Below are positions 3,989 to 62,458 of a stretch of 64,000 nt of DNA, piece by piece. The stretch covers positions 145,444-209,443 of IMG/VR virus record IMGVR_UViG_3300043446_003193, one strand, 5' to 3'. The notes below the pieces were generated by a model. It saw only the letters and a list, made by a program, of their open reading frames with translations. It did not search any database and was not told the origin of the DNA. The stretch's first letter is position 1. The number at the start of each line of letters is the position of its first letter. The position numbers and the translations under genes were made by a program.

Positions 3989-4014
3989 CTTTTTATTACT
4001 CTAATCCGTTAAGA

Positions 4015-5640
4015 TTATAAAGTGTTTAAACCGTTTACGATAATCTTACCGTAGAATTCTGGTCTAACGATCTTCTTAGCGTAACGAGTCATAACTCCTC
4101 TTCTTGGAGTGAAGTTAGTTGGATCGTACACTAAAGGAGTCATAATCAATGGAACATATGGAGCGTATACAGCACCTGTCTCAAAGAAGTTAGAACCTTT
4201 AAATCCTAATAAGATAACGTTCTCAGTCATGTATGGGTTTTTGTAAACATCATATCTGTTAGAGATAGAACCGATGTTAGTTACACCTGCAGCAAATTGT
4301 AAAGCATCTTTACCAGGATTTGCAGAGAAACCGTTCATTGATTCCAAAATAGTTGCAACGTTTGGAGATACTACTACGAAGTTAGCACCACCTCTCATTG
4401 TTAACTGATGGATTTTGTTAGATACCTTTTGTAATTTGATACCTAAAGTTTGATACCAAGTACTCTTAGTGTATGCAGAAGCAGCTGCTGCGTTAGAATC
4501 TACCGCGAATGCTCCAGTTGCACTATTGTAATCGTATCCAACTCTTGCATCCCAATAATCAGTTGTGAATGCGTTTTGTTGTAACATTTCTAAGATTTCC
4601 AAATCAATTTCTAAAGAAATGTACTCAGATAACATTTGAGTTAACTCAGCTTCAGCGTCTACACTATGGTAAGCATTTAAGTCTTGAGCTAATTCAGGAG
4701 TCCAAATTGCTTTCAACTTACGAGTCTTAGCAACGATTGGTTCTGATTTCAATTCTAATTCAATTTCTGGAATGTCTAAGTTTGAACCTTTATCTTCAAA
4801 GTCACCTCTGTTTTCAGCAGATGGTTGCTTATGATAAGATAATGTAGCACCACCAGCACTTACACCACCTGCAGATCCTGTACCGTAGAATTCTACTGAA
4901 GTACCATTGATCTTAGTGTATTTAGGATAGTAGTTGTTAGCTGTGATAGAACCAGATTGTAAGATTTCAAATGCTCTTACACCGTTCCAATCAGCATCAG
5001 TTGGTAAAGTTACAGTTACTTTTTTGATACCACCAGCTGCTAAAGAAGCAGATAAGTCAGCGTCAAAATTGATATCAGCCCAAGATGCAGTTGCAACTGT
5101 TGCGTCTAACGCTGCTGATGTATCGTTGATTGTATAACCAAATCTTCCAGCTCCGTAAAGACCACCTTCAGCAACTTGAGTAGAACCCAATTTGTTACCG
5201 TGAGATGCTTCAGAGTTGTAAGTTAAGTTATCCTTACCGAAAGTACCACCTTTACCGAATAATGAATTACCGTTAAAGTCTGGGTTACCAGCTTGTGAAG
5301 TACCATATTTGAAGTCCATGTAGAAAATAAGACCTGAAGGTAAGTTCATAGGTTGTACTGAAACGAATTCTTTAGCTGCGATAGAACCGAAGATTCTTCT
5401 TACTAAAGGTAACGCAACACCAGCCCATTCTTCAGAACCTGCTGAAGTACCTGTTCTTGTAGCCTCATCCAATAATTGCTTAGCTTGGTTTTCTAACATT
5501 ACTGCCATACCATGCTTAGTAGTTTCTGAACCTACTCCTTCAAGTAAGCCAGTTTTTTCCCATTTGCTTTTCAAACCTCTAGTTTGCTCAAGCATTACGC
5601 TCTGTGGGTTAGCGCCTGTCATTAATTTTTTTAAGTCCAT
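4015..5640 (-). CDS. gp23: Major capsid protein, T4 gp23 family
   Basis: LPLVRR, VQPMNLPSGLIF, AKTRKLKA.WTPELAQDL.AYH, YAPYVPL, F.PRRGVMTRYA motifs; probable maturation site LLDE/A near residue 59. Confidence 0.97.
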   Translation of the reverse strand: MDLKKLMTGANPQSVMLEQTRGLKSKWEKTGLLEGVGSETTKHGMAVMLENQAKQLLDEATRTGTSAGSEEWAGVALPLVRRIFGSIAAKEFVSVQPMNLPSGLIFYMDFKYGTSQAGNPDFNGNSLFGKGGTFGKDNLTYNSEASHGNKLGSTQVAEGGLYGAGRFGYTINDTSAALDATVATASWADINFDADLSASLAAGGIKKVTVTLPTDADWNGVRAFEILQSGSITANNYYPKYTKINGTSVEFYGTGSAGGVSAGGATLSYHKQPSAENRGDFEDKGSNLDIPEIELELKSEPIVAKTRKLKAIWTPELAQDLNAYHSVDAEAELTQMLSEYISLEIDLEILEMLQQNAFTTDYWDARVGYDYNSATGAFAVDSNAAAASAYTKSTWYQTLGIKLQKVSNKIHQLTMRGGANFVVVSPNVATILESMNGFSANPGKDALQFAAGVTNIGSISNRYDVYKNPYMTENVILLGFKGSNFFETGAVYAPYVPLIMTPLVYDPTNFTPRRGVMTRYAKKIVRPEFYGKIIVNGLNTL

Positions 5641-5663
5641 TGTATGTACTTTTAATTGTTTGT

Positions 5664-6881
5664 TTATTTAATAATACCTGCTAATTTCTTAAATCTGTCA
5701 GAAAAATCAGCTGATTCAGCAATTACTTGCTTAGCTGCTGCTGGCTTAGTAGATTTTACTGCTTTGCTAGCGATTCCTTCAGAAATAGATTTTTTAGTAG
5801 ATTTGTTAGATGAAGAATATTTGAAATTCTCTGCTAATGTAGAGTAAACCAATTTAACTTCTCTAACTGATTTTGTTCTATCCAAAGTTTCAATCACTTT
5901 AACTTTTTGTTCGTTAGTCATGTTGTGTGCTCTGAATAATTTGTTAGCGAATAACAACTTAGCGTTCAATAAGTTCACTTCGTTGATTGTTTTTTGTAAA
6001 GACTTGATAGTTTTGTAAGCTTCGTTAAGTTCTTTTTCTTTTTCTTCTTCTTCAGCTTCGTCAACTTTCTCTTTATCGTCTTTCATATCCGCTTCCATTT
6101 CACGTAAGATTTCTTCTAAATCAACAACGTCTTTGTCATCTTCTTTAGATTCTTCTTCGTTGGTTACAACCACTTTAGGGTCTTCACCTTTGTCTGTACC
6201 TGCTTCAGAACCATCTGCTAAATTTTCGTTTTTAGCTTCTTCATCTTCTTCAGCTTCGTACATAGGTTTTTCTTCTTCTTCAGAATCTTCACCTTCTAAT
6301 TGAGCTTCTAATTCTCTGATGATAGCTTCTAAGTCCATGTCATCTTCTGTTTCTTCTTCTTCAGAACCAGTTACGTCATAGTCTTCACCATCTTCTTCTC
6401 CTGTCTCATCCGCACCCGCAGTAAATGCTGGTAATTCTTCTTCAGAATCTTCTCCTTCTAATTCTGCTAATCTAGCTTTTAATTGAGCGATTTCGTCTTG
6501 TTTTGCAACTTCGTCATCACCAGCTTGATCATCAGCGAAAGGATTTTCTTCTTCAGAGATATCTGCTACCTTTTTGAAATCATCAACTTGTGCACCTGGT
6601 TCGCCAGATGTTGTTTCAGTTGAACCTGCTTCAAATTCAGTATCAGCGTCTAATGTAGGATTAGATGTAGATGCACCAATGTTTGATGAATCTAATTCTT
6701 CGTCAACTTTTTCAGCTTCTTTATCTTCAGCTTCAGCTTCTGCTCTTAACTTTGCAGATAAGATAGATTGAAGTCTTGGAGTGAAAGCCTCTTCAAGTGC
6801 GATTTTTGCGTTTGCTAAAGCAGTTTCTTTTACAGCTTTGGCATCAGCGATTGCTTCTTTCAATAATTTTGAATTTGCCAT
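5664..6881 (-). CDS. Prohead core scaffolding protein (gp22-like)
   Basis: Very acidic E/D-rich coiled coil directly upstream of the capsid gene; C-terminal RFKKLAGI. Confidence 0.8.
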   Translation of the reverse strand: MANSKLLKEAIADAKAVKETALANAKIALEEAFTPRLQSILSAKLRAEAEAEDKEAEKVDEELDSSNIGASTSNPTLDADTEFEAGSTETTSGEPGAQVDDFKKVADISEEENPFADDQAGDDEVAKQDEIAQLKARLAELEGEDSEEELPAFTAGADETGEEDGEDYDVTGSEEEETEDDMDLEAIIRELEAQLEGEDSEEEEKPMYEAEEDEEAKNENLADGSEAGTDKGEDPKVVVTNEEESKEDDKDVVDLEEILREMEADMKDDKEKVDEAEEEEKEKELNEAYKTIKSLQKTINEVNLLNAKLLFANKLFRAHNMTNEQKVKVIETLDRTKSVREVKLVYSTLAENFKYSSSNKSTKKSISEGIASKAVKSTKPAAAKQVIAESADFSDRFKKLAGIIK

Positions 6882-7028
6882 CTTTTTTCCTTAAATTTTG
6901 TTGTGAAGTTATTCTTGTAGGGAACTCCAATGTAATTATGTTGATTGTTCGGTCACACCTTATAAGAGAAGGGTATTCATTAACCAACGATGTCTTGTAA
7001 TCTTATAATAAAAATAAGATATTTGAGA
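6882..7028 (-). other. Long (~145 nt) structured 5' leader of the scaffold-capsid operon with Shine-Dalgarno TAAGGA
   Basis: Unusually long intergenic gap; hairpins ATCTTAT/ATAAGAT (7000-7020) and GTTGGTT/AATCAAC enclosing TACCCTT/AAGGTG; AAGGA 6 nt before the ATG. Confidence 0.5.
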
Positions 7029-7036
7029 ATAAATAT
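7029..7036 (-). promoter_or_regulatory. Late-promoter-like motif ATATTTAT for the scaffold-capsid operon
   Basis: Same motif as upstream of other structural genes. Confidence 0.65.
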
Positions 7037-7046
7037 ATAAAATTTT

Positions 7047-7066
7047 TAGAAAACTAAAGAAAATTA
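7047..7066. repeat. Operator-like 2x10-bp direct repeat TAGAAAACTA-AAGAAAATTA
   Basis: 19/20 identical to 34131-34150 upstream of the RHH gene. Confidence 0.7.
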
Positions 7067-7243
7067 GTGATTATACTTATTTTTTCTTATAGTTTCTTCT
7101 TTTTGTAACCTTTTTTTAATAGAAGGTTTAGTAAAGTTCTTTCTTTCTCTAAGTTCTTCTATTTGTTTTATGGACTGAACTTTCTTTTTATATTCCTTTA
7201 ATGCCCACTCTATGTTTCCGTTTTTCACGTTAACTATTAACAT
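7064..7243 (-). CDS. rpsU: Phage-encoded 30S ribosomal protein bS21 (59 aa, absent from the ORF track)
   Basis: Manual translation MLIVNVKNGNIEWALKEYKKKVQSIKQIEELRERKNFTKPSIKKRLQKEETIRKNKYNH; NIE.ALK..K.K and LR.R..F.KPS..R are bS21 signatures; MLI start resembles Bacteroidota bS21. Confidence 0.92.
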   Translation of the reverse strand: MLIVNVKNGNIEWALKEYKKKVQSIKQIEELRERKNFTKPSIKKRLQKEETIRKNKYNH

Positions 7244-7249
7244 AACTAA

Positions 7250-7549
7250 TTAATATGGTGTTTGATATTCCAATTGTTTTTTTAATTCTCTTTCGTATTC
7301 CTTTTCAATTTTATCTAAATCATCTTTAGCAGATTTAATATCTTCTTGATGTTTTTTTAATTGATAAAGATATTGGTTTTTTCTATCTTCGTTTTGTTCA
7401 TCAAAATATGCTTTACTCATCATTTTTTGACGAGTTGTTAATCCTTCATATTTTCTTATAGCATCAATGTATGCAGATGATGCTTTTCTAAAACCGGCTC
7501 TTATTTTAACTGCTTCTTCTTTTAAAGGAATTAGATTTATTAGTTTCAT
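7250..7549 (-). CDS. Hypothetical, putative internal head protein
   Basis: N-terminal KLINLIPLKEE shared in part with 8346..8624; head module. Confidence 0.5.
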   Translation of the reverse strand: MKLINLIPLKEEAVKIRAGFRKASSAYIDAIRKYEGLTTRQKMMSKAYFDEQNEDRKNQYLYQLKKHQEDIKSAKDDLDKIEKEYERELKKQLEYQTPY

Positions 7550-7920
7550 TATTGTAAATTAACTAATTTATATTTTGTAGAATATAATAAAGTTACAATC
7601 GTATCAATATCGTTTTGTAACCAACTCATTTGTAACTTTTCATCTTTTCTTAATTTCTCAACTGCTTTACAAAGTTTTTCAAAATAAGAAATTATATTTT
7701 TGATATCATTGTTAGTATCAATACCACTTACTGGTTGAACTTTGATTAATCCGTACTGTCCTTGATATGCTTCCACTAATCCATCTACTAATCCACCAAT
7801 TGAATCGTAATATGTACCTAAAGCCAAATGAGCAGATAATGCACCAACACCTTTAACTCCCCAATGGAAAGCATGTGCTTGTGTTCTACTGTGTAATAAT
7901 AATGATGCTAATTGTTCCAT
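7549..7920 (-). CDS. Dps/ferritin-like protein
   Basis: H..HW.V.G......H..L..YY.....VD.LVE pattern of Dps-type ferroxidase ligands. Confidence 0.7.
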   Translation of the reverse strand: MEQLASLLLHSRTQAHAFHWGVKGVGALSAHLALGTYYDSIGGLVDGLVEAYQGQYGLIKVQPVSGIDTNNDIKNIISYFEKLCKAVEKLRKDEKLQMSWLQNDIDTIVTLLYSTKYKLVNLQ

Positions 7921-8349
7921 TTATTTACAAGTTTTACATTCGTTAATTCCCAGTCTTTGTTTCATCACATCTTCAGAAATATCTGCTATTTCAAAATATC
8001 TTCCTAATACATGTCCCATATCTTCATAAAGAGCCTCTAATCTTTGTTGTTGTGCTCTAGCTTCTACTGCTTCCTTTTCAAATGAAGTTTGTAACTTTTT
8101 AAGTTCATTCATATTTCTCTTAATAGTTACTCTATCAAACCAATCTCCACCTTCTCTTAAAGTATATTCTTGTGCTGCATCTGCAATACCACCCAATGTT
8201 TCTGCAATTTGCATAATATCAGATTTTCTACTCATACCTTCTCTATGTTGGTTATATGTAGAAATTATTTCTAAGAAGTGTTTTTTTAATTCAGAAGGCA
8301 ATTGTTCTAATTGTTCTTCTTCTTTCAATAAATCTTTTAACTTTATCAT
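7921..8349 (-). CDS. Hypothetical, putative internal head protein
   Basis: N-terminal MIKLKDLLKEEE; coiled coil; head module. Confidence 0.5.
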   Translation of the reverse strand: MIKLKDLLKEEEQLEQLPSELKKHFLEIISTYNQHREGMSRKSDIMQIAETLGGIADAAQEYTLREGGDWFDRVTIKRNMNELKKLQTSFEKEAVEARAQQQRLEALYEDMGHVLGRYFEIADISEDVMKQRLGINECKTCK

Positions 8350-8624
8350 CTATGTACGATTTTATACTTTTTTAATCTTTGTACTGCCTGAGATAAGTCC
8401 TGTGGAGTCATATCTAATGCGTCTACTAATTTAGCAATAACTAATTGTTCTTTTTTTCTTGGTAAGTTATATGATTTAATAACTTGCAATGCTCTATCTA
8501 AAAATCTTTCTACTTTAGAAGGTAGATTAACATCCATATCTTCCAAATCTTCATTCATTTCTTCTTTTGAAAGAACTACTGCAGTTGTATAATTAGCCGG
8601 TATTAAGTTTATTAACTTTGCCAT
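8346..8624 (-). CDS. Hypothetical, putative internal head protein
   Basis: N-terminal KLINLIP...EEMNE. Confidence 0.5.
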   Translation of the reverse strand: MAKLINLIPANYTTAVVLSKEEMNEDLEDMDVNLPSKVERFLDRALQVIKSYNLPRKKEQLVIAKLVDALDMTPQDLSQAVQRLKKYKIVHR

Positions 8625-8625
8625 A

Positions 8626-9216
8626 TTAGTTTAATTCAATTATGATTTCTCTCATTAAATCCTGTGATTTACACCACTTACCACATTCTTCTGCCATCTG
8701 TTTCCATTGTTTAGATTCGTTCATTGGTGCCATAAATGCTCCATGTGTAGATGGATTAGAAACAAAATCCCAACCTACTAATTCAAAATCTTCTTGAACC
8801 ATTACAGTTCCATCTCTTAATTCTTTAACAGACCCTAAACCTCTTGATGAAATACCTAAACGAATATTATTCTTTAATAATTCTTTTAATATGTTACCAG
8901 ATGGAGTTGAAAGTATTTCTACTACACCACATACATCATCACCTTCCCAAAAAATTTCTCTAATATTGTGAGATACATTTTTTAAGTTAATTACTGGAGA
9001 ATCCGGATGGTCTAATTCACCCAACGCTCTTCTTTCTTTAATGAGTTGTTCGTATTTTTTACACTCTCTTTCCAATATTTCACGTGGATATCTTCTACCA
9101 TTTTGGTTTGCAGCCCCAGCTCTTTGAAGAATGCCCTTAACTAAATAAGTACCATTTTCTTCTTGTTGAAGTTTTGCTTCAAATAAGTGTGTTTCTATTA
9201 ATAGTCCTTTGTTCAT
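8626..9216 (-). CDS. gp21: Prohead core protease, T4 gp21 family
   Basis: N.NGRRYP, ALGELDHP, NVSH, TPSGNI, LGISSRGLGS, DFVSNPS motifs. Confidence 0.95.
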   Translation of the reverse strand: MNKGLLIETHLFEAKLQQEENGTYLVKGILQRAGAANQNGRRYPREILERECKKYEQLIKERRALGELDHPDSPVINLKNVSHNIREIFWEGDDVCGVVEILSTPSGNILKELLKNNIRLGISSRGLGSVKELRDGTVMVQEDFELVGWDFVSNPSTHGAFMAPMNESKQWKQMAEECGKWCKSQDLMREIIIELN

Positions 9217-9509
9217 TAGTCTTTTTTTCTTAATGCTGCTAAATCAGAACCTTCAATTTCTCCGTCTTTATCAACATCAATTTGTTTTTGCTTATCAGTC
9301 AATTCTGCTTCATTATATCCTCTTAATCTACCTTCTGATTTTGCTTTATAAGCAGTATCAACCGCATTAAAGAATTTTTTCTTATCATCATCACTCATAG
9401 AGCTGATATCTTTGCCACTCTTATCTAACATATGTTTAAACAATTGCTGATAATCGTTTTCTTCTTTAACTACCTGACGGATAAGTTCTTTTAATTGTGA
9501 TGTTTTCAT
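9216..9509 (-). CDS. Small head-module protein with EF-hand-like loop
   Basis: DVDKDGEIEGSD; N-terminal LKELIRQVVKEE. Confidence 0.55.
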   Translation of the reverse strand: MKTSQLKELIRQVVKEENDYQQLFKHMLDKSGKDISSMSDDDKKKFFNAVDTAYKAKSEGRLRGYNEAELTDKQKQIDVDKDGEIEGSDLAALRKKD

Positions 9510-11238: not shown

Positions 11239-11282
11239 TTGATATAGTTAATCAGATATAAATATATTTTTCTATTAGTTTA

Positions 11283-21277: not shown

Positions 21278-21309
21278 CAAACATAGTGAAAATTTTTGAA
21301 ATTTCCAAT
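21278..21309 (-). promoter_or_regulatory. Bacteroidota sigma70-type promoter (ATTG-N20-TATGTTTG)
   Basis: Perfect TAnnTTTG -7 element; a late motif also lies at 21228-21236. Confidence 0.6.
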
Positions 21310-22697
21310 TAAAGTTTTACATTTATCATCCAAGCATTTTCTGCAAATTGTTCTTTTGATACTAATTCGTATTGAACTTGATTTATACCATCTTCCTTAT
21401 AATTTATTTTTCCTTCCTGCATTTCCTTAACAAATCTTCTTTCGTTTTTTGCAGTTGGTTCACCCTTTATCCATTCTCCATTTACAAATCCCTCACTAGG
21501 ATGTGGTAATGCGTAAAATCTTCCATTTCTTCTATATGGTGTATTATTACTACTTACTTTAAATGTTTCATTTGTTATCTCTACATTATGTATCAATAAA
21601 TCAGAAATTACATTATTTTTATCTTTTAAAAAATCAGATATATTTTCAGGTAAAACTACATCATTGTAAATTTTAATATCTGCAATCTTTCCTTTTAAAT
21701 AATTTGCTATAATTGGATTACATTCACTGCATGGATTTTTACCAATTAAAATATCATTATTATATTTTTTTAATTTACCTTCAAATTCATGCGGTTTATA
21801 TTCCAATGTTTCTGTTCTTGTATTTTTAATTAAATTACTATTACAATAAAAATATATTTTATTTTCTTTAGAGTCTACCGAAACTGTTATCCATGTCCAT
21901 TCTCCAAATCCTCTTTTTATCCATGCATAAATTTGATTATCGTTTTGAGAATATAAAGAAGCGGATATTGCTCTAGAATTATTAAATCCTATAAAATAAG
22001 ATTCTTTTTTATCTATACTTAAAATTGGATATTCTACATATCGTTTATCTTTTATACCTATTAACCATTCTTTATATTTTTCAGGCTGATCTTCAATTTT
22101 ACACAAAATAGATAATGTATGTGATTGGGATAATAATTCCGATATACCAGTATCTTTTGGAATCGTTATATAAGAATTCTCTCCATCAAAATTAAAACAA
22201 GGAATATCATTGTATTCAAAAAATAAATTATCTTCTGTTAATCCTTCAAAACGACATCTCCAAAATAGGTCATCATCTTCCATACCCCAATCCCAATATT
22301 CATTAGAGTAACCATTTGTTGCTTCTACCTGTTCTTTATTCATTAATACAACACCACCGAAGTATTGTTCATAGTTTAATCTATATTTGTATTTAGATAC
22401 GGCGGTTGCAATATGTGTTGGAAACTTGTCTGGATATGAATAATCACAACTATCGTTTTCCGGTAACATATCTACATCGTGAAAAGCAACATAATCACAT
22501 CCATCTTCAAATGCATGTTTGGCTGCAATATTTTTCATCGCACCTCTATTGAATAATTTATCATCCGTTTGGTGTACAATATAAAATTGATGTGGAATTC
22601 CTTTTTTGTTTAAAAATTTTGTAAGATGAGGAACTAACATTTTAAGATGATATTCCCTATCTCTATAAGGAACACATATTCCGAGTTTTTTTATCAT
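21309..22697 (-). CDS. GT7 (beta-1,4-galactosyltransferase-like) glycosyltransferase with inserted LamG/ConA domain
   Basis: VPYRDR, FNRG..KN, HDVD, YFGGV, NGYSN.YW.WG.EDDD; insert FDGENSYI...W..ITV...IGK...LKGKIADIKIYN. Confidence 0.85.
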   Translation of the reverse strand: MIKKLGICVPYRDREYHLKMLVPHLTKFLNKKGIPHQFYIVHQTDDKLFNRGAMKNIAAKHAFEDGCDYVAFHDVDMLPENDSCDYSYPDKFPTHIATAVSKYKYRLNYEQYFGGVVLMNKEQVEATNGYSNEYWDWGMEDDDLFWRCRFEGLTEDNLFFEYNDIPCFNFDGENSYITIPKDTGISELLSQSHTLSILCKIEDQPEKYKEWLIGIKDKRYVEYPILSIDKKESYFIGFNNSRAISASLYSQNDNQIYAWIKRGFGEWTWITVSVDSKENKIYFYCNSNLIKNTRTETLEYKPHEFEGKLKKYNNDILIGKNPCSECNPIIANYLKGKIADIKIYNDVVLPENISDFLKDKNNVISDLLIHNVEITNETFKVSSNNTPYRRNGRFYALPHPSEGFVNGEWIKGEPTAKNERRFVKEMQEGKINYKEDGINQVQYELVSKEQFAENAWMINVKL

Positions 22698-34100: not shown

Positions 34101-34150
34101 AAGAAAACTAATAAATACTATATTGTATTATAGAAAACTAAAGAAAACTA
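34101..34150 (+). repeat. Phased 10-bp direct repeats WAGAAAACTA (operator-like)
   Basis: Copies at 34101, 34131, 34141 plus a degenerate copy at 34111, all in 10-bp phase. Confidence 0.75.
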
Positions 34151-38413: not shown

Positions 38414-38445
38414 GTAATATACAACAAATATTTGATATTACCAAA
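38414..38445 (-). promoter_or_regulatory. Bacteroidota sigma70-type promoter (TTTG-N20-TATATTAC)
   Basis: Shares 16 identical bp with the 62427-62458 copy. Confidence 0.7.
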
Positions 38446-48478: not shown

Positions 48479-49636
48479 TTAGAAAGATTTTGGATGCATC
48501 TTTCCAAATCTTGTTTTATAATCCTTTGATTCAGTTGTACCATCTGCTTTTGTAACAGATACCGTCATAGTTGAATCATAACTTACACTATGTGAGTTGC
48601 CATATAATGGAAAACCTCCTGGTTTTGAATCTATTCCATCACCCGCTTTGTGATCAATTCTAAGTTGTATATCTTTAGTACCTCCAGGTGGTAAACTAAA
48701 CTGTGTTTCAGGAATAATTAACCAATCAGGATTTCTTCCGATTCCACTTGGTTTAGTGTGACTTATTTTTACGGTTGCGGCCGCTTTATCATTATTGGTA
48801 AACTTTAATGTTCCACCGGTTGACCATCTAACTTCGCTACTACCTGATTTTCCATTACCTCTTAATTTAACATCTTTATCTTCAGTAGGGCCGTCTATTT
48901 TTAATATAACTGCTTTATTAATTGCGTCTGCTCCAGATGCCAATGCAGTATTTGTAGTTGATTGTTGAATCGCTTGTTGTTGTTGAACCGCACCTAATTG
49001 TGCCTGTAAACCTTCAATGATTGAATTCAATGAATCAATTTGTTTAATTAATGCTTCAATTTGTGCTTTAAATCCAGTATTTTGTGATTGTAAAGAAGCT
49101 CTTAAAATAGATTCATCAATTGATTTTTGAACTGCTGATTGTATTTGATTTGAAAAATCTTGTATAGTTCCAGTTAAAGTATCAATTTGGTTAACCAATG
49201 TATCGTTTGTTTGATCAACTGATAATCTATTATTTATTTCAGTTTGAACCTGTGATTTTAAAGTAACTATCTGGGAATTAAGTGCTTCAACTTTTGCAGT
49301 TAATGATTGAACTTGCTTTCTTAAATCTTCTACTAAAGCAACTTGCTCATCATATAAAGGTTTTGGAACGAGATTTAAATTACGTTCTGGTATTACTGGT
49401 TTTAATTCTTTTACCTCAACATCAATTGCTTTTAATATTTCTTCTTCATCATACTTTGGTGCAGTTAATGATTTAAATAACAAAGAAGATGCAACATTTT
49501 TTTCATCAACAACTGTTACACCATATTCGTTTTTAGAAACAGCAGAACTTCCCGATACTCTCAATACACTTTCAAGTTCAGAACTTCTTGTTTCATCTAA
49601 TTTTTGAGCAATTGCTTCCAATGATGTTAATGCCAT
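48479..49636 (-). CDS. Coiled-coil structural protein with C-terminal Ig-like domain
   Basis: Heptad Q/L-rich middle; beta-rich C-terminus. Confidence 0.5.
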   Translation of the reverse strand: MALTSLEAIAQKLDETRSSELESVLRVSGSSAVSKNEYGVTVVDEKNVASSLLFKSLTAPKYDEEEILKAIDVEVKELKPVIPERNLNLVPKPLYDEQVALVEDLRKQVQSLTAKVEALNSQIVTLKSQVQTEINNRLSVDQTNDTLVNQIDTLTGTIQDFSNQIQSAVQKSIDESILRASLQSQNTGFKAQIEALIKQIDSLNSIIEGLQAQLGAVQQQQAIQQSTTNTALASGADAINKAVILKIDGPTEDKDVKLRGNGKSGSSEVRWSTGGTLKFTNNDKAAATVKISHTKPSGIGRNPDWLIIPETQFSLPPGGTKDIQLRIDHKAGDGIDSKPGGFPLYGNSHSVSYDSTMTVSVTKADGTTESKDYKTRFGKMHPKSF

Positions 49637-50703
49637 TATGCAACTATTTGAAATATTAATTTATTATCAATTATTGTTGAAATTCCACTTTCAACTATTT
49701 TAAGTTTTAACCTATATGCTCTATTAATTGGTAAAGTATTTAAATCAACAATAAAATAATTTGAAGTTGAATCACAACTTAATTTACTATAATCTCCAAA
49801 AGGAATTATAATTTCATTAGTTGTATAATCTTCTAATTGATAATATGAAGATGTTGGTAAATACTTTGATTGGTCGTATTCAAATGTTGTACTAAATGAT
49901 TTTGAAGGAAACATATCTCTACCCTTAACTCTTATTTTTATTTTTTGATTAGCAGGATATTGTTTTTTTAAATTTGATACAACAACCTTATAACCATCTT
50001 CTGCAGAGCCGGTTACCGGTGCTAAACTTCCTGTTGAAACTGAACTATCATCCCAAACTATTTCTAATTTAGGTTCATATATTGTATTAGTTTCTTTTGA
50101 AAAGAATTTAAGAACACCATAATCTTGTGTATCGTTTTCTTTATCCAAAGCATGGTGTAATATAAATCCATTGTTTGGTAGAGAACCACTAACCCATAAA
50201 TTTACAATACCAGTTACATCCATTCTAACATCATCCGATTCGTATGAATAAGATTGTGATGCCATAGATGCAGTATACCAAGTTCCACCACCACCATTGG
50301 AGATAGAGCCCGTATCGGAGCCACTCACATATGCATCTGGATTAATATCATATACCATCCATTCGTTTATACCATCTTTATAAAACCAACTAACACCATC
50401 TGTTGTTATGTTATCAAATTTAGTACCAGTTCCCATTGTCCAACTTTGAGAAACTGCGTTTGCATAAATTGTATATTCTAATGGAATTTCTTCGGATTTA
50501 GCCGCCTTTAAATTAAGATATGCTTTCCAACCACTTCCCGTTTCCAAATTAGAAACATTAAATTTAATCAATGTTCTATTTACATCTTTAGTAGCACCAT
50601 AATATAGTTTACCTACTTCTAATATTTCATCTCTCCCAGCATTTTGATTTGGTTGCTGTAAGTAGATACTTGCATCGTATGATGATGTATAAAATTTATG
50701 CAT
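49636..50703 (-). CDS. Virion protein with DNRLRE/CBM96-like domain
   Basis: DASIY..QPNQNAG....EVG...RTLIKF...DVTGIV..W......NNGFIL...PKLEI. Confidence 0.6.
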   Translation of the reverse strand: MHKFYTSSYDASIYLQQPNQNAGRDEILEVGKLYYGATKDVNRTLIKFNVSNLETGSGWKAYLNLKAAKSEEIPLEYTIYANAVSQSWTMGTGTKFDNITTDGVSWFYKDGINEWMVYDINPDAYVSGSDTGSISNGGGGTWYTASMASQSYSYESDDVRMDVTGIVNLWVSGSLPNNGFILHHALDKENDTQDYGVLKFFSKETNTIYEPKLEIVWDDSSVSTGSLAPVTGSAEDGYKVVVSNLKKQYPANQKIKIRVKGRDMFPSKSFSTTFEYDQSKYLPTSSYYQLEDYTTNEIIIPFGDYSKLSCDSTSNYFIVDLNTLPINRAYRLKLKIVESGISTIIDNKLIFQIVA

Positions 50704-59888: not shown

Positions 59889-59920
59889 GTAATATACGAA
59901 AATAAATCTAAATTACCAAA
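59889..59920 (-). promoter_or_regulatory. Bacteroidota sigma70-type promoter (TTTG-N20-TATATTAC), 4 nt before the uvsE ATG
   Basis: Same architecture as the other copies. Confidence 0.72.
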
Positions 59921-62426: not shown

Positions 62427-62458
62427 CTAATATACGAAAAATTTTTGATATTACCAAA
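62427..62458 (-). promoter_or_regulatory. Bacteroidota sigma70-type promoter (TTTG-N20-TATATTAG)
   Basis: Same architecture as the other copies. Confidence 0.72.

What the first reader, a model, noticed from the sequence alone, without database searches (positions are those of the whole stretch)
6882..7243. Hidden bS21 gene beside the scaffold gene's isolated Shine-Dalgarno: possible ribosome re-tuning for capsid production
Seen: a 59-aa bS21 ORF (7243-7064, missed by the track) lies directly upstream of the scaffold-capsid operon. The scaffold has TAAGGA 6 nt before its ATG, while the other gene starts I inspected, including gp23, are AT-rich and SD-less. Established: phage bS21 genes near head genes are known in large freshwater phages, and in Bacteroidota (Flavobacterium) bS21 helps sequester the anti-SD, with its C-terminal region including a Tyr near position 54 implicated. 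Inference: aligned on KPS from memory of the host protein, the phage protein has Arg53 at that position and a short C-terminus. Swapping it into host 30S subunits could free the anti-SD and selectively boost the SD-bearing scaffold mRNA.
Basis: partly seen in the sequence, partly recalled or inferred. Interest (0 to 1): 0.85.

Follow-up and report, generated by a model that had tools for sequence, protein, structure and literature searches.

The report
Phage bS21 gene beside structured scaffold leader
A freshwater T4-like phage of a probable Bacteroidota host carries a real ribosomal protein bS21 gene that lacks the host-type tyrosine known to hide the ribosome's anti-Shine-Dalgarno tail. The "gap" next to it is a conserved folded RNA leader of the scaffold-capsid message, and the idea that the two cooperate through one weak Shine-Dalgarno motif is still unproven.

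Summary
The 59-aa ORF at 7064-7243(-) is a genuine bS21 gene under purifying selection. TAAGGA does sit 6 nt before the scaffold ATG. It is not "isolated": it ranks 22nd of 202 starts, and SD-like motifs are no more frequent at starts than in mock windows. It is, however, invariant in about 65 related phage loci.

Arg53 occupies the position of Flavobacterium johnsoniae Tyr54, and the C-terminal tail is shorter and more basic. This is clade-wide, including sister lineages that use SDs generally and one SD-poor lineage with no scaffold SD. The bS21/scaffold-SD coupling is therefore not general.

New here: the 182-nt gap is a structured 5' leader with three helices. 15 of 19 pairs show compensatory changes, there is one copy per genome, it always lies upstream of the scaffold gene, and Rfam has no match. 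Metatranscriptome contigs cover capsid, scaffold and leader up to about 6988 but hardly cover bS21.

TAAGGA is most likely an ancestral SD kept in the leader's single-stranded stretch. Pairing is weak (about -5 kcal/mol), a class that gave no response in published F. johnsoniae Y54A/deltaC reporter assays. The ribosome re-tuning idea remains testable but unproven.

The parts
7064..7243 (-). Phage bS21 gene (59 aa). The N-terminal half is Flavobacteriia-like. Arg53 sits at the position of Bacteroidia Tyr54, and the C-terminal tail is short and basic, ending in ...RKNKYNH.
   Evidence: Pfam, NCBIfam and PHROG hits. 229 close homologues of 58-59 aa. Alignments. Codon-position conservation.
6876..6988 (-). 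Structured 5' leader of the scaffold-capsid mRNA. P1 is 6982-6988 with 6940-6946. HP1 is 6969-6974 with 6955-6961 (bulged). HP2 is 6923-6929 with 6904-6910. The conserved junctions read AAUGAAUAC and GUGACCGAAC. An A-rich single-stranded initiation region follows.
   Evidence: RNAalifold. Pair counts: 98.8% of cells paired against 33-56% in slid controls, and 97.2% with 15 of 19 pairs compensatory. Covariance model R1 gives one hit per genome, 106.8 bits here. No Rfam match.
6888..6893 (-). TAAGGA, the SD-like motif 6 nt upstream of the scaffold ATG, between HP2 and the start codon.
   Evidence: Sequence. Invariant in about 65 related loci with variable spacing. dG -5.1 kcal/mol, rank 22 of 202.
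6989..7063 (-). Upstream part of the gap. It holds an invariant 16-mer TTTCTTTAGTTTTCTA (7047-7062), a late-promoter-like ATATTTATT (7028-7036) and an AT-rich hairpin. The promoter of the scaffold-capsid mRNA probably lies here.
   Evidence: RNA contig depth falls near 6988.
5664..6881 (-). gp22-like acidic scaffold (prohead core) protein, 405 aa.
   Evidence: Position between the protease module and gp23. The N-terminus LLKEAIADAK is conserved across all lineages. Homologous to the immuto and Mel-JY01 genes at the same place.
4015..5640 (-). gp23-type major capsid protein. It starts 23 nt after the scaffold stop, and its start region is A/T-only without an SD.
   Evidence: PF07068, E = 1.2e-77. 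Start regions of relatives.
8626..9216 (-). gp21-type prohead protease. It belongs to the upstream gene run that ends with bS21. A late-like ATATTTATA motif lies at 11257-11265.
   Evidence: PF03420, E = 1.2e-29. Motif list.

Best explanation
The ORF is a genuine phage copy of ribosomal protein bS21. It belongs to a large, almost wholly uncultured clade of T4-like aquatic myoviruses. The nearest named relatives are Flavobacterium phage immuto, Microcystis phage Mel-JY01 and the huge phage LR756508. In every lineage sampled here except immuto (no bS21) and Mel-JY01 (two genes intervene), bS21 sits on the coding strand directly upstream of the scaffold-capsid genes.

This phage infects a host with Bacteroidia-type, SD-blind translation (inferred). 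Its bS21 keeps a Flavobacteriia-like N-terminal helix. At the Bacteroidia signature position Tyr54 it has Arg, the basic type of residue recalled for SD-using bacteria (from memory of the E. coli and Firmicutes proteins, not read off a tool output), and its C-terminal tail is short and basic (shown).

The 182-nt 'gap' is the promoter region plus a conserved, folded 5' leader (P1, HP1, HP2) of an abundant scaffold-capsid mRNA. Its 5' end lies near 6988, and bS21 is not part of the abundant transcript (structure shown; transcript ends suggested by metatranscriptome contigs).

TAAGGA lies in the single-stranded stretch between HP2 and the AUG. It is most simply an ancestral SD of the scaffold gene. 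Sister lineages that use SDs have AAGGAAGG, GAAAGG or AGGAG at the same place. This SD-poor family has kept the motif under purifying selection as part of the leader.

Inferred mechanism, with my estimates:
- The phage bS21 enters host 30S subunits late in infection (about 0.7, by analogy with HTVC008M bS21).
- Lacking Tyr54, it clamps the 16S 3' tail less tightly than host bS21 (about 0.45).
- The resulting gain for the weak TAAGGA is at best modest (about 0.15-0.2 that it is measurable).

The scaffold-capsid message would then owe its output mainly to its own promoter, its leader and an A-rich Bacteroidia-type start region.
For: - bS21 identity and selection.
- Clade, synteny and residue at the Tyr54 position (R/K/H/Q/M, never Tyr).
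- Intermediates keeping 'A[IV]Y' fix the ungapped register: (L080).
- Host type: A enriched at -11..-13 (0.63-0.73) and at -3, G depleted, SD-like sites 11% at starts against 15-23% in controls. Promoter-like TTTGG-N17-19-CGTATATTT motifs in intergenic regions.
- SD usage differs by lineage: 28-30% against 10-11% mock in G001-G003, 9% against 21% in G004, 11% against 15% here.
- Leader structure. One covariance-model hit per genome over 642 kb.
- Leader columns are invariant at 61% of sites against 21-28% for 3rd codon positions.
- RNA: depth is high over 4000-6943, about a quarter of that in 6944-7127, and about 0 over 7128-8599. One contig ends at 6988.
- Literature: Tyr54 stacking and the less basic C-terminal domain (PMC7797042). 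Y54A and deltaC effects, and no effect for a weak SD (PMC9976891). Loss of bS21 releases the ASD (PMC13000457).
Against: - No experiment shows that this bS21 enters ribosomes, or where the 16S tail then lies.
- Y57 (F58 in most relatives) lies one helical turn after Arg53 and could replace Tyr54. One relative (P0068) lacks any aromatic residue there.
- The RNA evidence comes from assembled contigs of relatives at 85% identity or more. The bS21 coding region averages 86% identity, so its low depth may partly be a threshold effect, and a contig end is not a mapped 5' end.
- The host is inferred, not shown.
- The covariance model does not reach significance for immuto, LR756508 and lineage D. Their membership rests on inspection by eye.
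- The strict invariance of TAAGGA within the leader would also fit a specific function, either ASD pairing or another one.
Confidence: 0.55

Rival explanations
1. Phage bS21 (Arg in place of Tyr54) replaces host bS21, frees the anti-SD of the Bacteroidia ribosome, and thereby selectively boosts the one conserved SD-bearing late message, the scaffold mRNA (and the capsid gene through coupling).
For: - Arg53 at the Tyr54 position and a basic tail.
- Y54A and deltaC in F. johnsoniae raise strong-SD reporters 1.7- to 4-fold.
- TAAGGA(A/G) is invariant in about 65 loci, with SD-compatible spacing of 6-9 nt, in a genome where G is otherwise avoided upstream of starts.
- Other SD-like sites are not conserved.
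- Phages of the kind described by Chen et al. 2022 keep Tyr54 and have an SD-less capsid start.
Against: - Pairing is only 5-6 bp (-5.1 kcal/mol), and a weak SD (AGGA) did not respond in Y54A or deltaC cells.
- Lineage A has the same kind of bS21 and an SD-depleted genome but no SD at scaffold or capsid.
- Arg at this position is clade-wide, including in phages that use SDs generally.
- The capsid gene, needed in larger amounts, has no SD here.
- Ribosomes lacking the bS21 C-terminal helix initiate worse on SD-less mRNAs, which make up nearly all of this phage's mRNAs.
- bS21 appears far less transcribed than scaffold and capsid.
Confidence: 0.15
2. TAAGGA is a functional part of the leader RNA and has nothing to do with the anti-SD. 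It could pair with the pyrimidine-rich 5' side of the HP2 loop (UUCC/UCCU) to form a pseudoknot or a cis 'anti-SD' that gates the start region. Or it could be part of an operator for a phage translational regulator.
For: - The leader as a whole is under strong constraint and has three covarying helices.
- Lineages with GGA in the start region (own family, L113, B, L085/L086) have UCCU or UUCC at the start of the HP2 loop. Lineages without it (A, L114, immuto, LR756508) lack both.
Against: - Lineages C and D and Mel-JY01 have an SD-like motif without a clear complement in the loop.
- The complementarity is only 4-6 nt and partly overlaps the HP2 stem.
- No covariation test was possible, and no regulator has been identified.
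Confidence: 0.2
3. There is nothing special here. TAAGGA is a chance purine run in an A-rich start region, and its conservation only reflects the short evolutionary distance between the related contigs.
For: Within this genome the motif is at chance frequency: rank 22 of 202, and 15 of 202 in both real and mock windows. 61% of all leader columns are invariant anyway.
Against: - Third codon positions in the flanking genes are invariant at only 21-28% of sites, so six neutral sites would rarely all be invariant.
- The positions immediately upstream and the spacer downstream do vary.
- GG-containing purine motifs recur at the same place in diverged lineages with different sequences.
Confidence: 0.1

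Closest known systems
Head-module bS21 of freshwater Bacteroidetes myoviruses (Chen et al. 2022, ISME Commun 2:31, PMC9723584)
   Same: A T4-like freshwater phage with about 32% GC and a Bacteroidota-like bS21 encoded among the head genes. The proposal is the same: the phage protein replaces host bS21 during late protein production.
   Different: Those phages carry bS21 on the reverse strand between the portal and protease genes, and they keep an aromatic residue (mostly Tyr) at position 54 (context of P0274). Here bS21 is co-oriented with its neighbours, lies directly upstream of the scaffold leader, and has Arg at that position. The genome is 209 kb, against 293-331 kb.
F. johnsoniae bS21/rpsU autoregulation through a freed anti-SD (Jha 2021 PMC7797042; McNutt 2023 PMC9976891; PMC13000457)
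   Same: The logic is the same: a ribosome whose bS21 does not hold the 16S 3' tail gains the ability to read an SD. The phage protein is in effect a natural Y54R variant with an altered C-terminal helix.
   Different: The rpsU SD is extended (below -13 kcal/mol, up to 13 bp) and acts on ribosomes that lack bS21 altogether. Here the motif is 5-6 bp, the phage bS21 gene itself has no SD, and no functional data exist.
Pelagibacter phage HTVC008M bS21 and other viral ribosomal proteins (Mizuno et al. 2019, as cited in PMC9976891)
   Same: bS21 encoded by a T4-like aquatic myovirus. That protein was shown to enter E. coli ribosomes.
   Different: Different host type and a different clade. No link to an SD-blind ribosome and no associated leader RNA has been described.
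Francisella bS21 paralogues that change which mRNAs are translated (PMC9578407, abstract)
   Same: Alternative bS21 proteins give ribosomes of different mRNA preference.
   Different: These are cellular paralogues in an SD-using gammaproteobacterium, not a phage takeover.
Structured 5' leaders and translational operators of T4 late and middle genes, such as the gene 32 pseudoknot and RegA sites (from general knowledge, not tested here)
   Same: A phage mRNA leader with conserved helices next to the start region.
   Different: No sequence or Rfam relationship. The fold here (P1 enclosing a bulged hairpin, then a second hairpin) is confined to this clade's scaffold gene, and its ligand or partner is unknown.

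Membership tests
Ribosomal protein bS21 (PF01165 / TIGR00030) | Profile score above the curated cut-off over the whole domain | tested here: met
   PF01165: 48.8 bits against 27, covering profile positions 2-54 of 55. TIGR00030: 41 bits against 28.95.
Ribosomal protein bS21 (PF01165 / TIGR00030) | Small size (about 55-70 aa), two-helix layout with a conserved KPS motif between the helices | tested here: met
   59 aa, K39-P40-S41. Aligns end to end with solved bS21 chains.
Ribosomal protein bS21 (PF01165 / TIGR00030) | Assembles into the 30S subunit | not testable with these tools
   Known only by analogy with HTVC008M bS21 (cited).
Bacteroidia-type, anti-SD-sequestering bS21 | Signature Tyr54 that stacks on A1534 | tested here: not met
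   Arg53 falls in that column in the 40-sequence alignment and by the ungapped KPS+12 rule. Intermediates keep A[IV]Y. A small alignment gives Thr51. The nearest aromatic residue is Y57.
Bacteroidia-type, anti-SD-sequestering bS21 | C-terminal domain less basic than in other phyla | tested here: not met
   Net charge +5 over 18 residues. The Flavobacterium value of about +2 over 22 residues is a hand count from the alignment, not a tool output. Criterion taken from PMC7797042.
Bacteroidia-type, anti-SD-sequestering bS21 | Overall closest to Bacteroidota bS21 | tested here: met
   The best solved-structure matches are 9i5v_9 and the F. johnsoniae chain 7jil_z. Identity to Flavobacterium bS21 is 41-44%, concentrated in residues 1-45.
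Chen-2022-type phage bS21 | Aromatic residue at position 54, and the gene on the reverse strand between portal and protease | tested here: not met
   Arg at the position. The gene is co-oriented with its neighbours and lies between the protease module and the scaffold gene. The Chen-type context was seen for P0274.
Shine-Dalgarno sequence | Complementarity to the 16S 3' tail at 5-10 nt from the start codon | tested here: met
   AAGGA gives 5 bp with a CCUCCUUU tail, and 6 bp in the TAAGGAG variants. Spacing is 6-9 nt and dG is -5.1 kcal/mol. The host's own 16S tail is unknown.
Shine-Dalgarno sequence | Motif enriched at starts over background in the same genome | tested here: not met
   15 of 202 in both real and mock windows. 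11% of starts against 23% of internal ATGs.
Shine-Dalgarno sequence | Conserved at orthologous starts | tested here: met
   Invariant in the family. GG-containing purine motifs occur at the same place in lineages B, C and D and in L085/L086. They are absent in A, L114, immuto and LR756508.
Shine-Dalgarno sequence | Actually pairs with the anti-SD and raises initiation | not testable with these tools
   Needs reporters, toeprinting or cryo-EM.
Conserved structured cis-regulatory leader RNA (no Rfam family) | Helices supported by compensatory changes beyond controls | tested here: met
   On the unfitted MAFFT alignment A4: 98.8% of cells paired against 33-56% in slid controls, 7 compensatory pairs, 0 of 500 shuffles as good. 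RNAalifold on A3: 9 of 12 pairs compensatory. On A5, which is fitted to the model: 15 of 19 pairs.
Conserved structured cis-regulatory leader RNA (no Rfam family) | Fixed genomic position and single copy | tested here: met
   One hit per genome, always upstream of the scaffold gene, over 642 kb searched.
Conserved structured cis-regulatory leader RNA (no Rfam family) | Match to a described RNA family | tested here: not met
   No Rfam 15 match at E <= 1.

The most novel reading that the evidence does not exclude
A clade of phages of SD-blind Bacteroidota carries a natural Tyr54-to-Arg bS21. Once swapped into host 30S subunits late in infection, it unlocks the sequestered anti-SD. The unlocked ribosomes are then recruited through the conserved TAAGGA(G), presented by a dedicated three-helix leader, to the scaffold-capsid message. 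This would be a phage-made specialised ribosome paired with a phage-made RNA switch.
Probability: 0.12. Interest if true: 0.85.

Novelty: new variant of a known kind. Interest (0 to 1): 0.58.

Why it matters
Why so many aquatic phages encode bS21 is an open question. Until now the only studied set from Bacteroidota phages was reported always to keep the anti-SD-occluding aromatic residue. This clade does not keep it at that position. Nature has therefore supplied the Y54 substitution (and a remodelled C-terminal helix) whose laboratory versions are already known to liberate the anti-SD in F. johnsoniae. That makes the 'phage re-tunes the ribosome' idea directly testable with existing strains and reporters.

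Separately, the conserved three-helix leader in front of the scaffold-capsid genes is a candidate new cis-regulatory RNA. It controls the most abundant late message of a widespread group of uncultured freshwater phages.

Tried and rejected
- **Coding uORF in the gap.** A 47-aa TTG ORF (6844-6987) overlaps the leader, but relatives carry 1- and 2-nt indels in the hairpin loops that break the frame. Rejected.
- **Single-sequence fold of the 207-nt gap.** Not better than shuffles (z = 0.65). The structure became visible only by comparison across lineages.
- **Rfam and terminator scans.** No Rfam match and no terminator-like site.
- **Other, stronger SD-like starts.**
  - GGGAGGG before the gene at 49636-50703 lies in the end of the upstream coding region (KGRAI-stop). 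Synonymous GGAAGAG replaces it in at least 27 of 80 homologues.
  - AAAGGA before the gene at 21309-22697 is absent in homologues.
- **Co-occurrence of bS21 with the leader.** Rejected. By eye, immuto has a leader-like arrangement but no bS21 anywhere. In Mel-JY01 two genes separate bS21 from the leader.
- **Small MAFFT alignment.** It placed Thr51 under Tyr54. The broader alignment with intermediates superseded it.
- **Loose promoter patterns.**
  - TTTG-N17-21-TATATT gave 14 window matches against 7.4 expected.
  - ATATTTATW gave 16 against 13.7, not enriched by count alone.
  - The signal is strand bias (45 against 5) and position, with 34 of 45 lying 12-44 nt before a start.
- **Searches that gave nothing useful.**
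  - Megablast against GenBank phages found nothing.
  - 'relatives' is not available for a virus record.
  - The Chen et al. supplements hold no sequences.
  - Several representative bS21 proteins sat on contigs too short to be useful.
Full report
**What is at the coordinates**

The minus strand of 4000-9300 carries a T4-type head module:
- gp21-like prohead protease (8626-9216, PF03420);
- several small genes, including a DUF5856/Dps-like one (7549-7920);
- a 59-aa ORF at 7064-7243;
- a 182-nt non-coding gap;
- an acidic 405-aa gp22-like scaffold gene (5664-6881);
- a gp23 capsid gene (4015-5640, PF07068, E = 1.2e-77).

The 59-aa ORF is bS21: PF01165 at 48.8 bits against a cut-off of 27, TIGR00030 at 41 bits against 28.95, and phrog_21469. 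The window is the last 64 kb of a 209,443-bp IMG/VR virus record, estimated complete, with 31.8% GC and a single bS21. My crude ORF call gives 212 genes, 206 of them on one strand. In 59 related loci the bS21 codons show 80% invariant 1st and 2nd positions against 21% invariant 3rd positions, so the gene is real and under selection.

**The Shine-Dalgarno observation**

TAAGGA (6888-6893) followed by 6 nt and the ATG is present. Genome-wide, starts are SD-poor:
- Predicted pairing of -4.5 kcal/mol or better occurs at 11% of starts against 23% of internal ATGs.
- With a Bacteroidia-type tail the figure is 11% of starts against 15% of mock windows.
- G makes up 5-13% of upstream positions. A peaks at -11 to -13 (0.63-0.73) and at -3 (0.59). 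This is the pattern described for Bacteroidia (A-3, -6, -12, -13; PMC9976891).

The scaffold motif is not isolated. It ranks 22nd of 202 starts at -5.1 kcal/mol. Perfect complements of 5 nt or more occur at 15 of 202 starts and at 15 of 202 mock windows.

What sets it apart is conservation. In all of about 65 related IMG/VR loci where the scaffold start is seen, TAAGGA(A/G) is invariant. The bases just upstream vary, and the A-run to the ATG varies in length, giving a spacing of 6-9 nt.

Two stronger SD-like sites did not hold up. One lies in the end of an upstream coding region and is lost by synonymous changes in many homologues. The other is absent in homologues.

**Host**

I infer a Bacteroidota host from four observations:
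- the start-region signature above;
- SD depletion at starts;
- intergenic motifs of the form TTTGG-N17-19-CGTATATTT, which resemble the Bacteroidota -33 TTTG / -7 TAnnTTTG promoter (the consensus is from my own knowledge);
- capsid similarity (53%) to Flavobacterium phage immuto.

The bS21 N-terminal half is also closest to Bacteroidota proteins. None of this is direct proof.

**The bS21 protein**

With F. johnsoniae-type sequences obtained through a search, a small alignment put Thr51 under Tyr54. A 40-sequence alignment changes that. It includes intermediates such as the L080 protein and many representatives that keep 'A[IV]Y' exactly 12 residues after KPS. It aligns the region without gaps and puts Arg53 in the Tyr54 column. 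Either way the residue is not aromatic.

The C-terminal domain has 18 residues and net charge +5. Flavobacterium has 22 residues and about +2, by hand count from the alignment. The tail aligns better with the Firmicutes ending ...RKRKF than with the Bacteroidota ending.

Published work shows the following:
- Tyr54 stacks on A1534 and is Bacteroidia-specific (PMC7797042).
- Y54A and deltaC raise strong-SD reporters 1.7- to 4-fold, whereas a weak SD (AGGA) does not respond (PMC9976891).
- Loss of bS21 releases the anti-SD (PMC13000457).

One caveat: Y57 here, or F58 in most relatives, lies one helical turn further along and might substitute for Tyr54. One relative has no aromatic residue there.

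**Comparison across the clade**

I searched with more distant bS21 representatives and with a distant scaffold protein. This uncovered many lineages with the same order: protease module, bS21, a 125-190-nt gap, scaffold, capsid. In all of them bS21 has R, K, H, Q or M at the Tyr54 position, and never Tyr.

The phages described by Chen et al. 2022 are a different group. A Tyr54-type representative (P0274) sits on the reverse strand between portal and protease, exactly as that paper describes, and its capsid start is SD-less.

I read 100 kb from each of four sister genomes:

| Genome (lineage) | SD-like sites at starts | SD-like sites in mock windows | Scaffold start | Capsid start |
|---|---|---|---|---|
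| G001 (B) | 29% | 11% | AAGGAAGGT | AGGAG-type |
| G002 (C) | 30% | 10% | AAGGAAGGC or GAAAGG | AAGGAG-type |
| G003 (D) | 28% | 11% | TAGGAGA | seen only in L143 (AAAGGAT) |
| G004 (A) | 9% | 21% | none | none |
| This genome | 11% | 15% | TAAGGA | none |

Other relatives:
- L085/L086 have AAAGGA-type motifs at about half of the starts seen, including scaffold and capsid.
- Immuto has no bS21 at all and no SD at either gene.
- LR756508 has bS21 and no SD at either gene.
- Mel-JY01 has bS21 and GGAGA at every start seen.

Arg at position 54 is therefore the clade's general state. The scaffold motif mostly tracks each genome's overall SD usage. The family in the window is the exception: it kept the motif at the scaffold gene only.

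**The gap is a structured leader**

Across 59 family members the gap is 91% identical on average, against 74-80% at 3rd codon positions of the flanking genes. 61% of its columns are invariant, against 21-28% of 3rd positions. The longest invariant runs are GTGACCGAACAATC, TTAATGAATAC, AATAACTTCAC and ATTGGAGTT.

Comparison with other lineages shows three helices with compensatory changes:
- P1 is 6982-6988 with 6940-6946.
- HP1 is a bulged hairpin, 6969-6974 with 6955-6961.
- HP2 is 6923-6929 with 6904-6910.
- About 25 nt of A-rich single strand follow, holding TAAGGA and the AUG.

Support for the structure:
- RNAalifold on an unfitted alignment of 26 sequences recovers HP1 and HP2, with 9 of 12 pairs compensatory.
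- On a 13-sequence MAFFT alignment the full structure has 98.8% of cells paired, against 33-56% when the partners are slid. It has 7 compensatory pairs, and 0 of 500 shuffles do as well.
- A covariance model built from that alignment finds exactly one hit per genome in 642 kb, always in front of the scaffold gene. The window scores 106.8 bits, lineages B and C 92-104, L114 85, L085 66, L086 50, Mel-JY01 33 (E = 0.007), and lineage A 23-31.
- On the resulting alignment, which is fitted to the model, 15 of 19 pairs are compensatory and 97.2% of cells are paired.

Immuto, LR756508 and lineage D look similar by eye but do not reach significance. Rfam has no match. The 'AAGGTG' and 'GGAG' strings in the gap are stem halves, not SDs.

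**Transcripts**

Four metatranscriptome runs hold contigs of relatives. Laid on 4000-9500 at 85% identity or more, depth behaves as follows:
- It is high over capsid, scaffold and leader.
- It falls to about a quarter in the bin 6944-7127.
- It is about zero over 7128-8599, which includes the bS21 coding region.
- It is low (1-13) over the protease gene.

One near-identical contig spans 6841-6988 and ends exactly at the first base of P1. This fits an abundant scaffold-capsid mRNA that starts at or near the leader, with bS21 on a much less abundant upstream transcript.

Three caveats apply. These are assembled contigs, the bS21 coding region averages 86% identity (at the threshold), and a contig end is not a mapped 5' end. 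A late-promoter-like motif, ATATTTAT[AT], occurs 45 times on the coding strand against 5 on the other, and 34 of the 45 lie 12-44 nt before a start. Its copy in this gap (7028-7036) is 155 nt before the ATG, so where the promoter lies is unresolved.

**Reading**

- Shown: a real phage bS21 of the Arg54 type, a conserved TAAGGA, and a conserved folded leader.
- Inferred: a Bacteroidota host, and entry of the phage protein into 30S subunits with a looser hold on the 16S tail.
- Weak link: that this helps a 5-6-bp motif.

The published reporters, lineage A, the SD-less capsid gene and the cost on SD-less mRNAs all argue against a large, selective effect.

I therefore treat TAAGGA as an ancestral SD retained within a constrained leader. 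For the latter, the HP2 loop begins with UUCC or UCCU in the lineages that have GGA in the start region.

Noticed in passing
window 7047-7062 (-) and 34131-34146 (-): The exact 16-mer TTTCTTTAGTTTTCTA occurs twice in the window: right after the bS21 stop and in a divergent intergenic region. 0.46 matches are expected by chance. It is invariant in 59 family loci and is also present in lineage A gaps. It could be a binding site or a transcription signal.
   Followed up: partly
whole genome; window examples 38416-38445, 59891-59920, 62429-62458 (-): Two classes of promoter-like motif. TTTGG-N17-19-CGTATATTT in longer intergenic regions resembles a Bacteroidota sigma-A promoter. ATATTTAT[AT] lies 12-44 nt upstream of many starts, in the manner of T4 late promoters.
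   Followed up: partly
window 6904-6929 (HP2 loop) and 6888-6893: The 5' side of the HP2 loop (UUCC/UCCU) is complementary to the GGA of the start region in lineages that have the motif. Both are missing in lineages A, L114, immuto and LR756508. This may indicate a pseudoknot or a cis anti-SD.
   Followed up: partly
window 6859-6881 (-): The first 23 nt of the scaffold coding region, including 3rd codon positions, are invariant in 59 loci. The constraint on the start region extends into the gene.
   Followed up: no
L080:4001-4192: A viral contig encodes a bS21 whose N-terminal half is like this phage's (MLIVNVKNGNIE...) but whose C-terminal half is the Flavobacterium type with the Tyr (KQKAEYIQFLRD). 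It serves as a bridge between the two types and is not next to a scaffold gene.
   Followed up: partly
L270/L271 (context of P0274): The arrangement described by Chen et al. 2022 (TerL, portal, bS21 on the reverse strand, protease, DUF4494, capsid) goes with a Tyr54-type bS21. Head-module bS21 thus occurs in two distinct arrangements with different residues at position 54.
   Followed up: partly
L082:4731-5972 (MW353176.1): The scaffold homologue of Flavobacterium phage immuto is annotated in GenBank as 'DNA polymerase phi-like protein'. This is probably a misnomer caused by its acidic low-complexity middle part.
   Followed up: no
L083 (PP395634.1, Microcystis phage Mel-JY01): This phage, recorded with a cyanobacterial host, belongs to the same head-module clade (capsid 55% identical). 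It has the leader RNA (33 bits) and uses GGAGA before every start seen.
   Followed up: partly
genome 13.7-20.9 kb (outside the window): Long 'intergenic' stretches there contain many tRNA-like sequences, apparently a tRNA cluster. ARAGORN found no tRNA inside the 64-kb window.
   Followed up: no
whole genome: Extreme strand bias: 206 of 212 ORF-called genes lie on one strand. The same holds in four sister genomes (86 of 87, 116 of 116, 116 of 118, 88 of 91).
   Followed up: no
window 7549-7920 (-): A DUF5856 / 'starvation-inducible' Dps-like gene sits two genes upstream of bS21. It is conserved at that place in the relatives whose flanks reach it.
   Followed up: no
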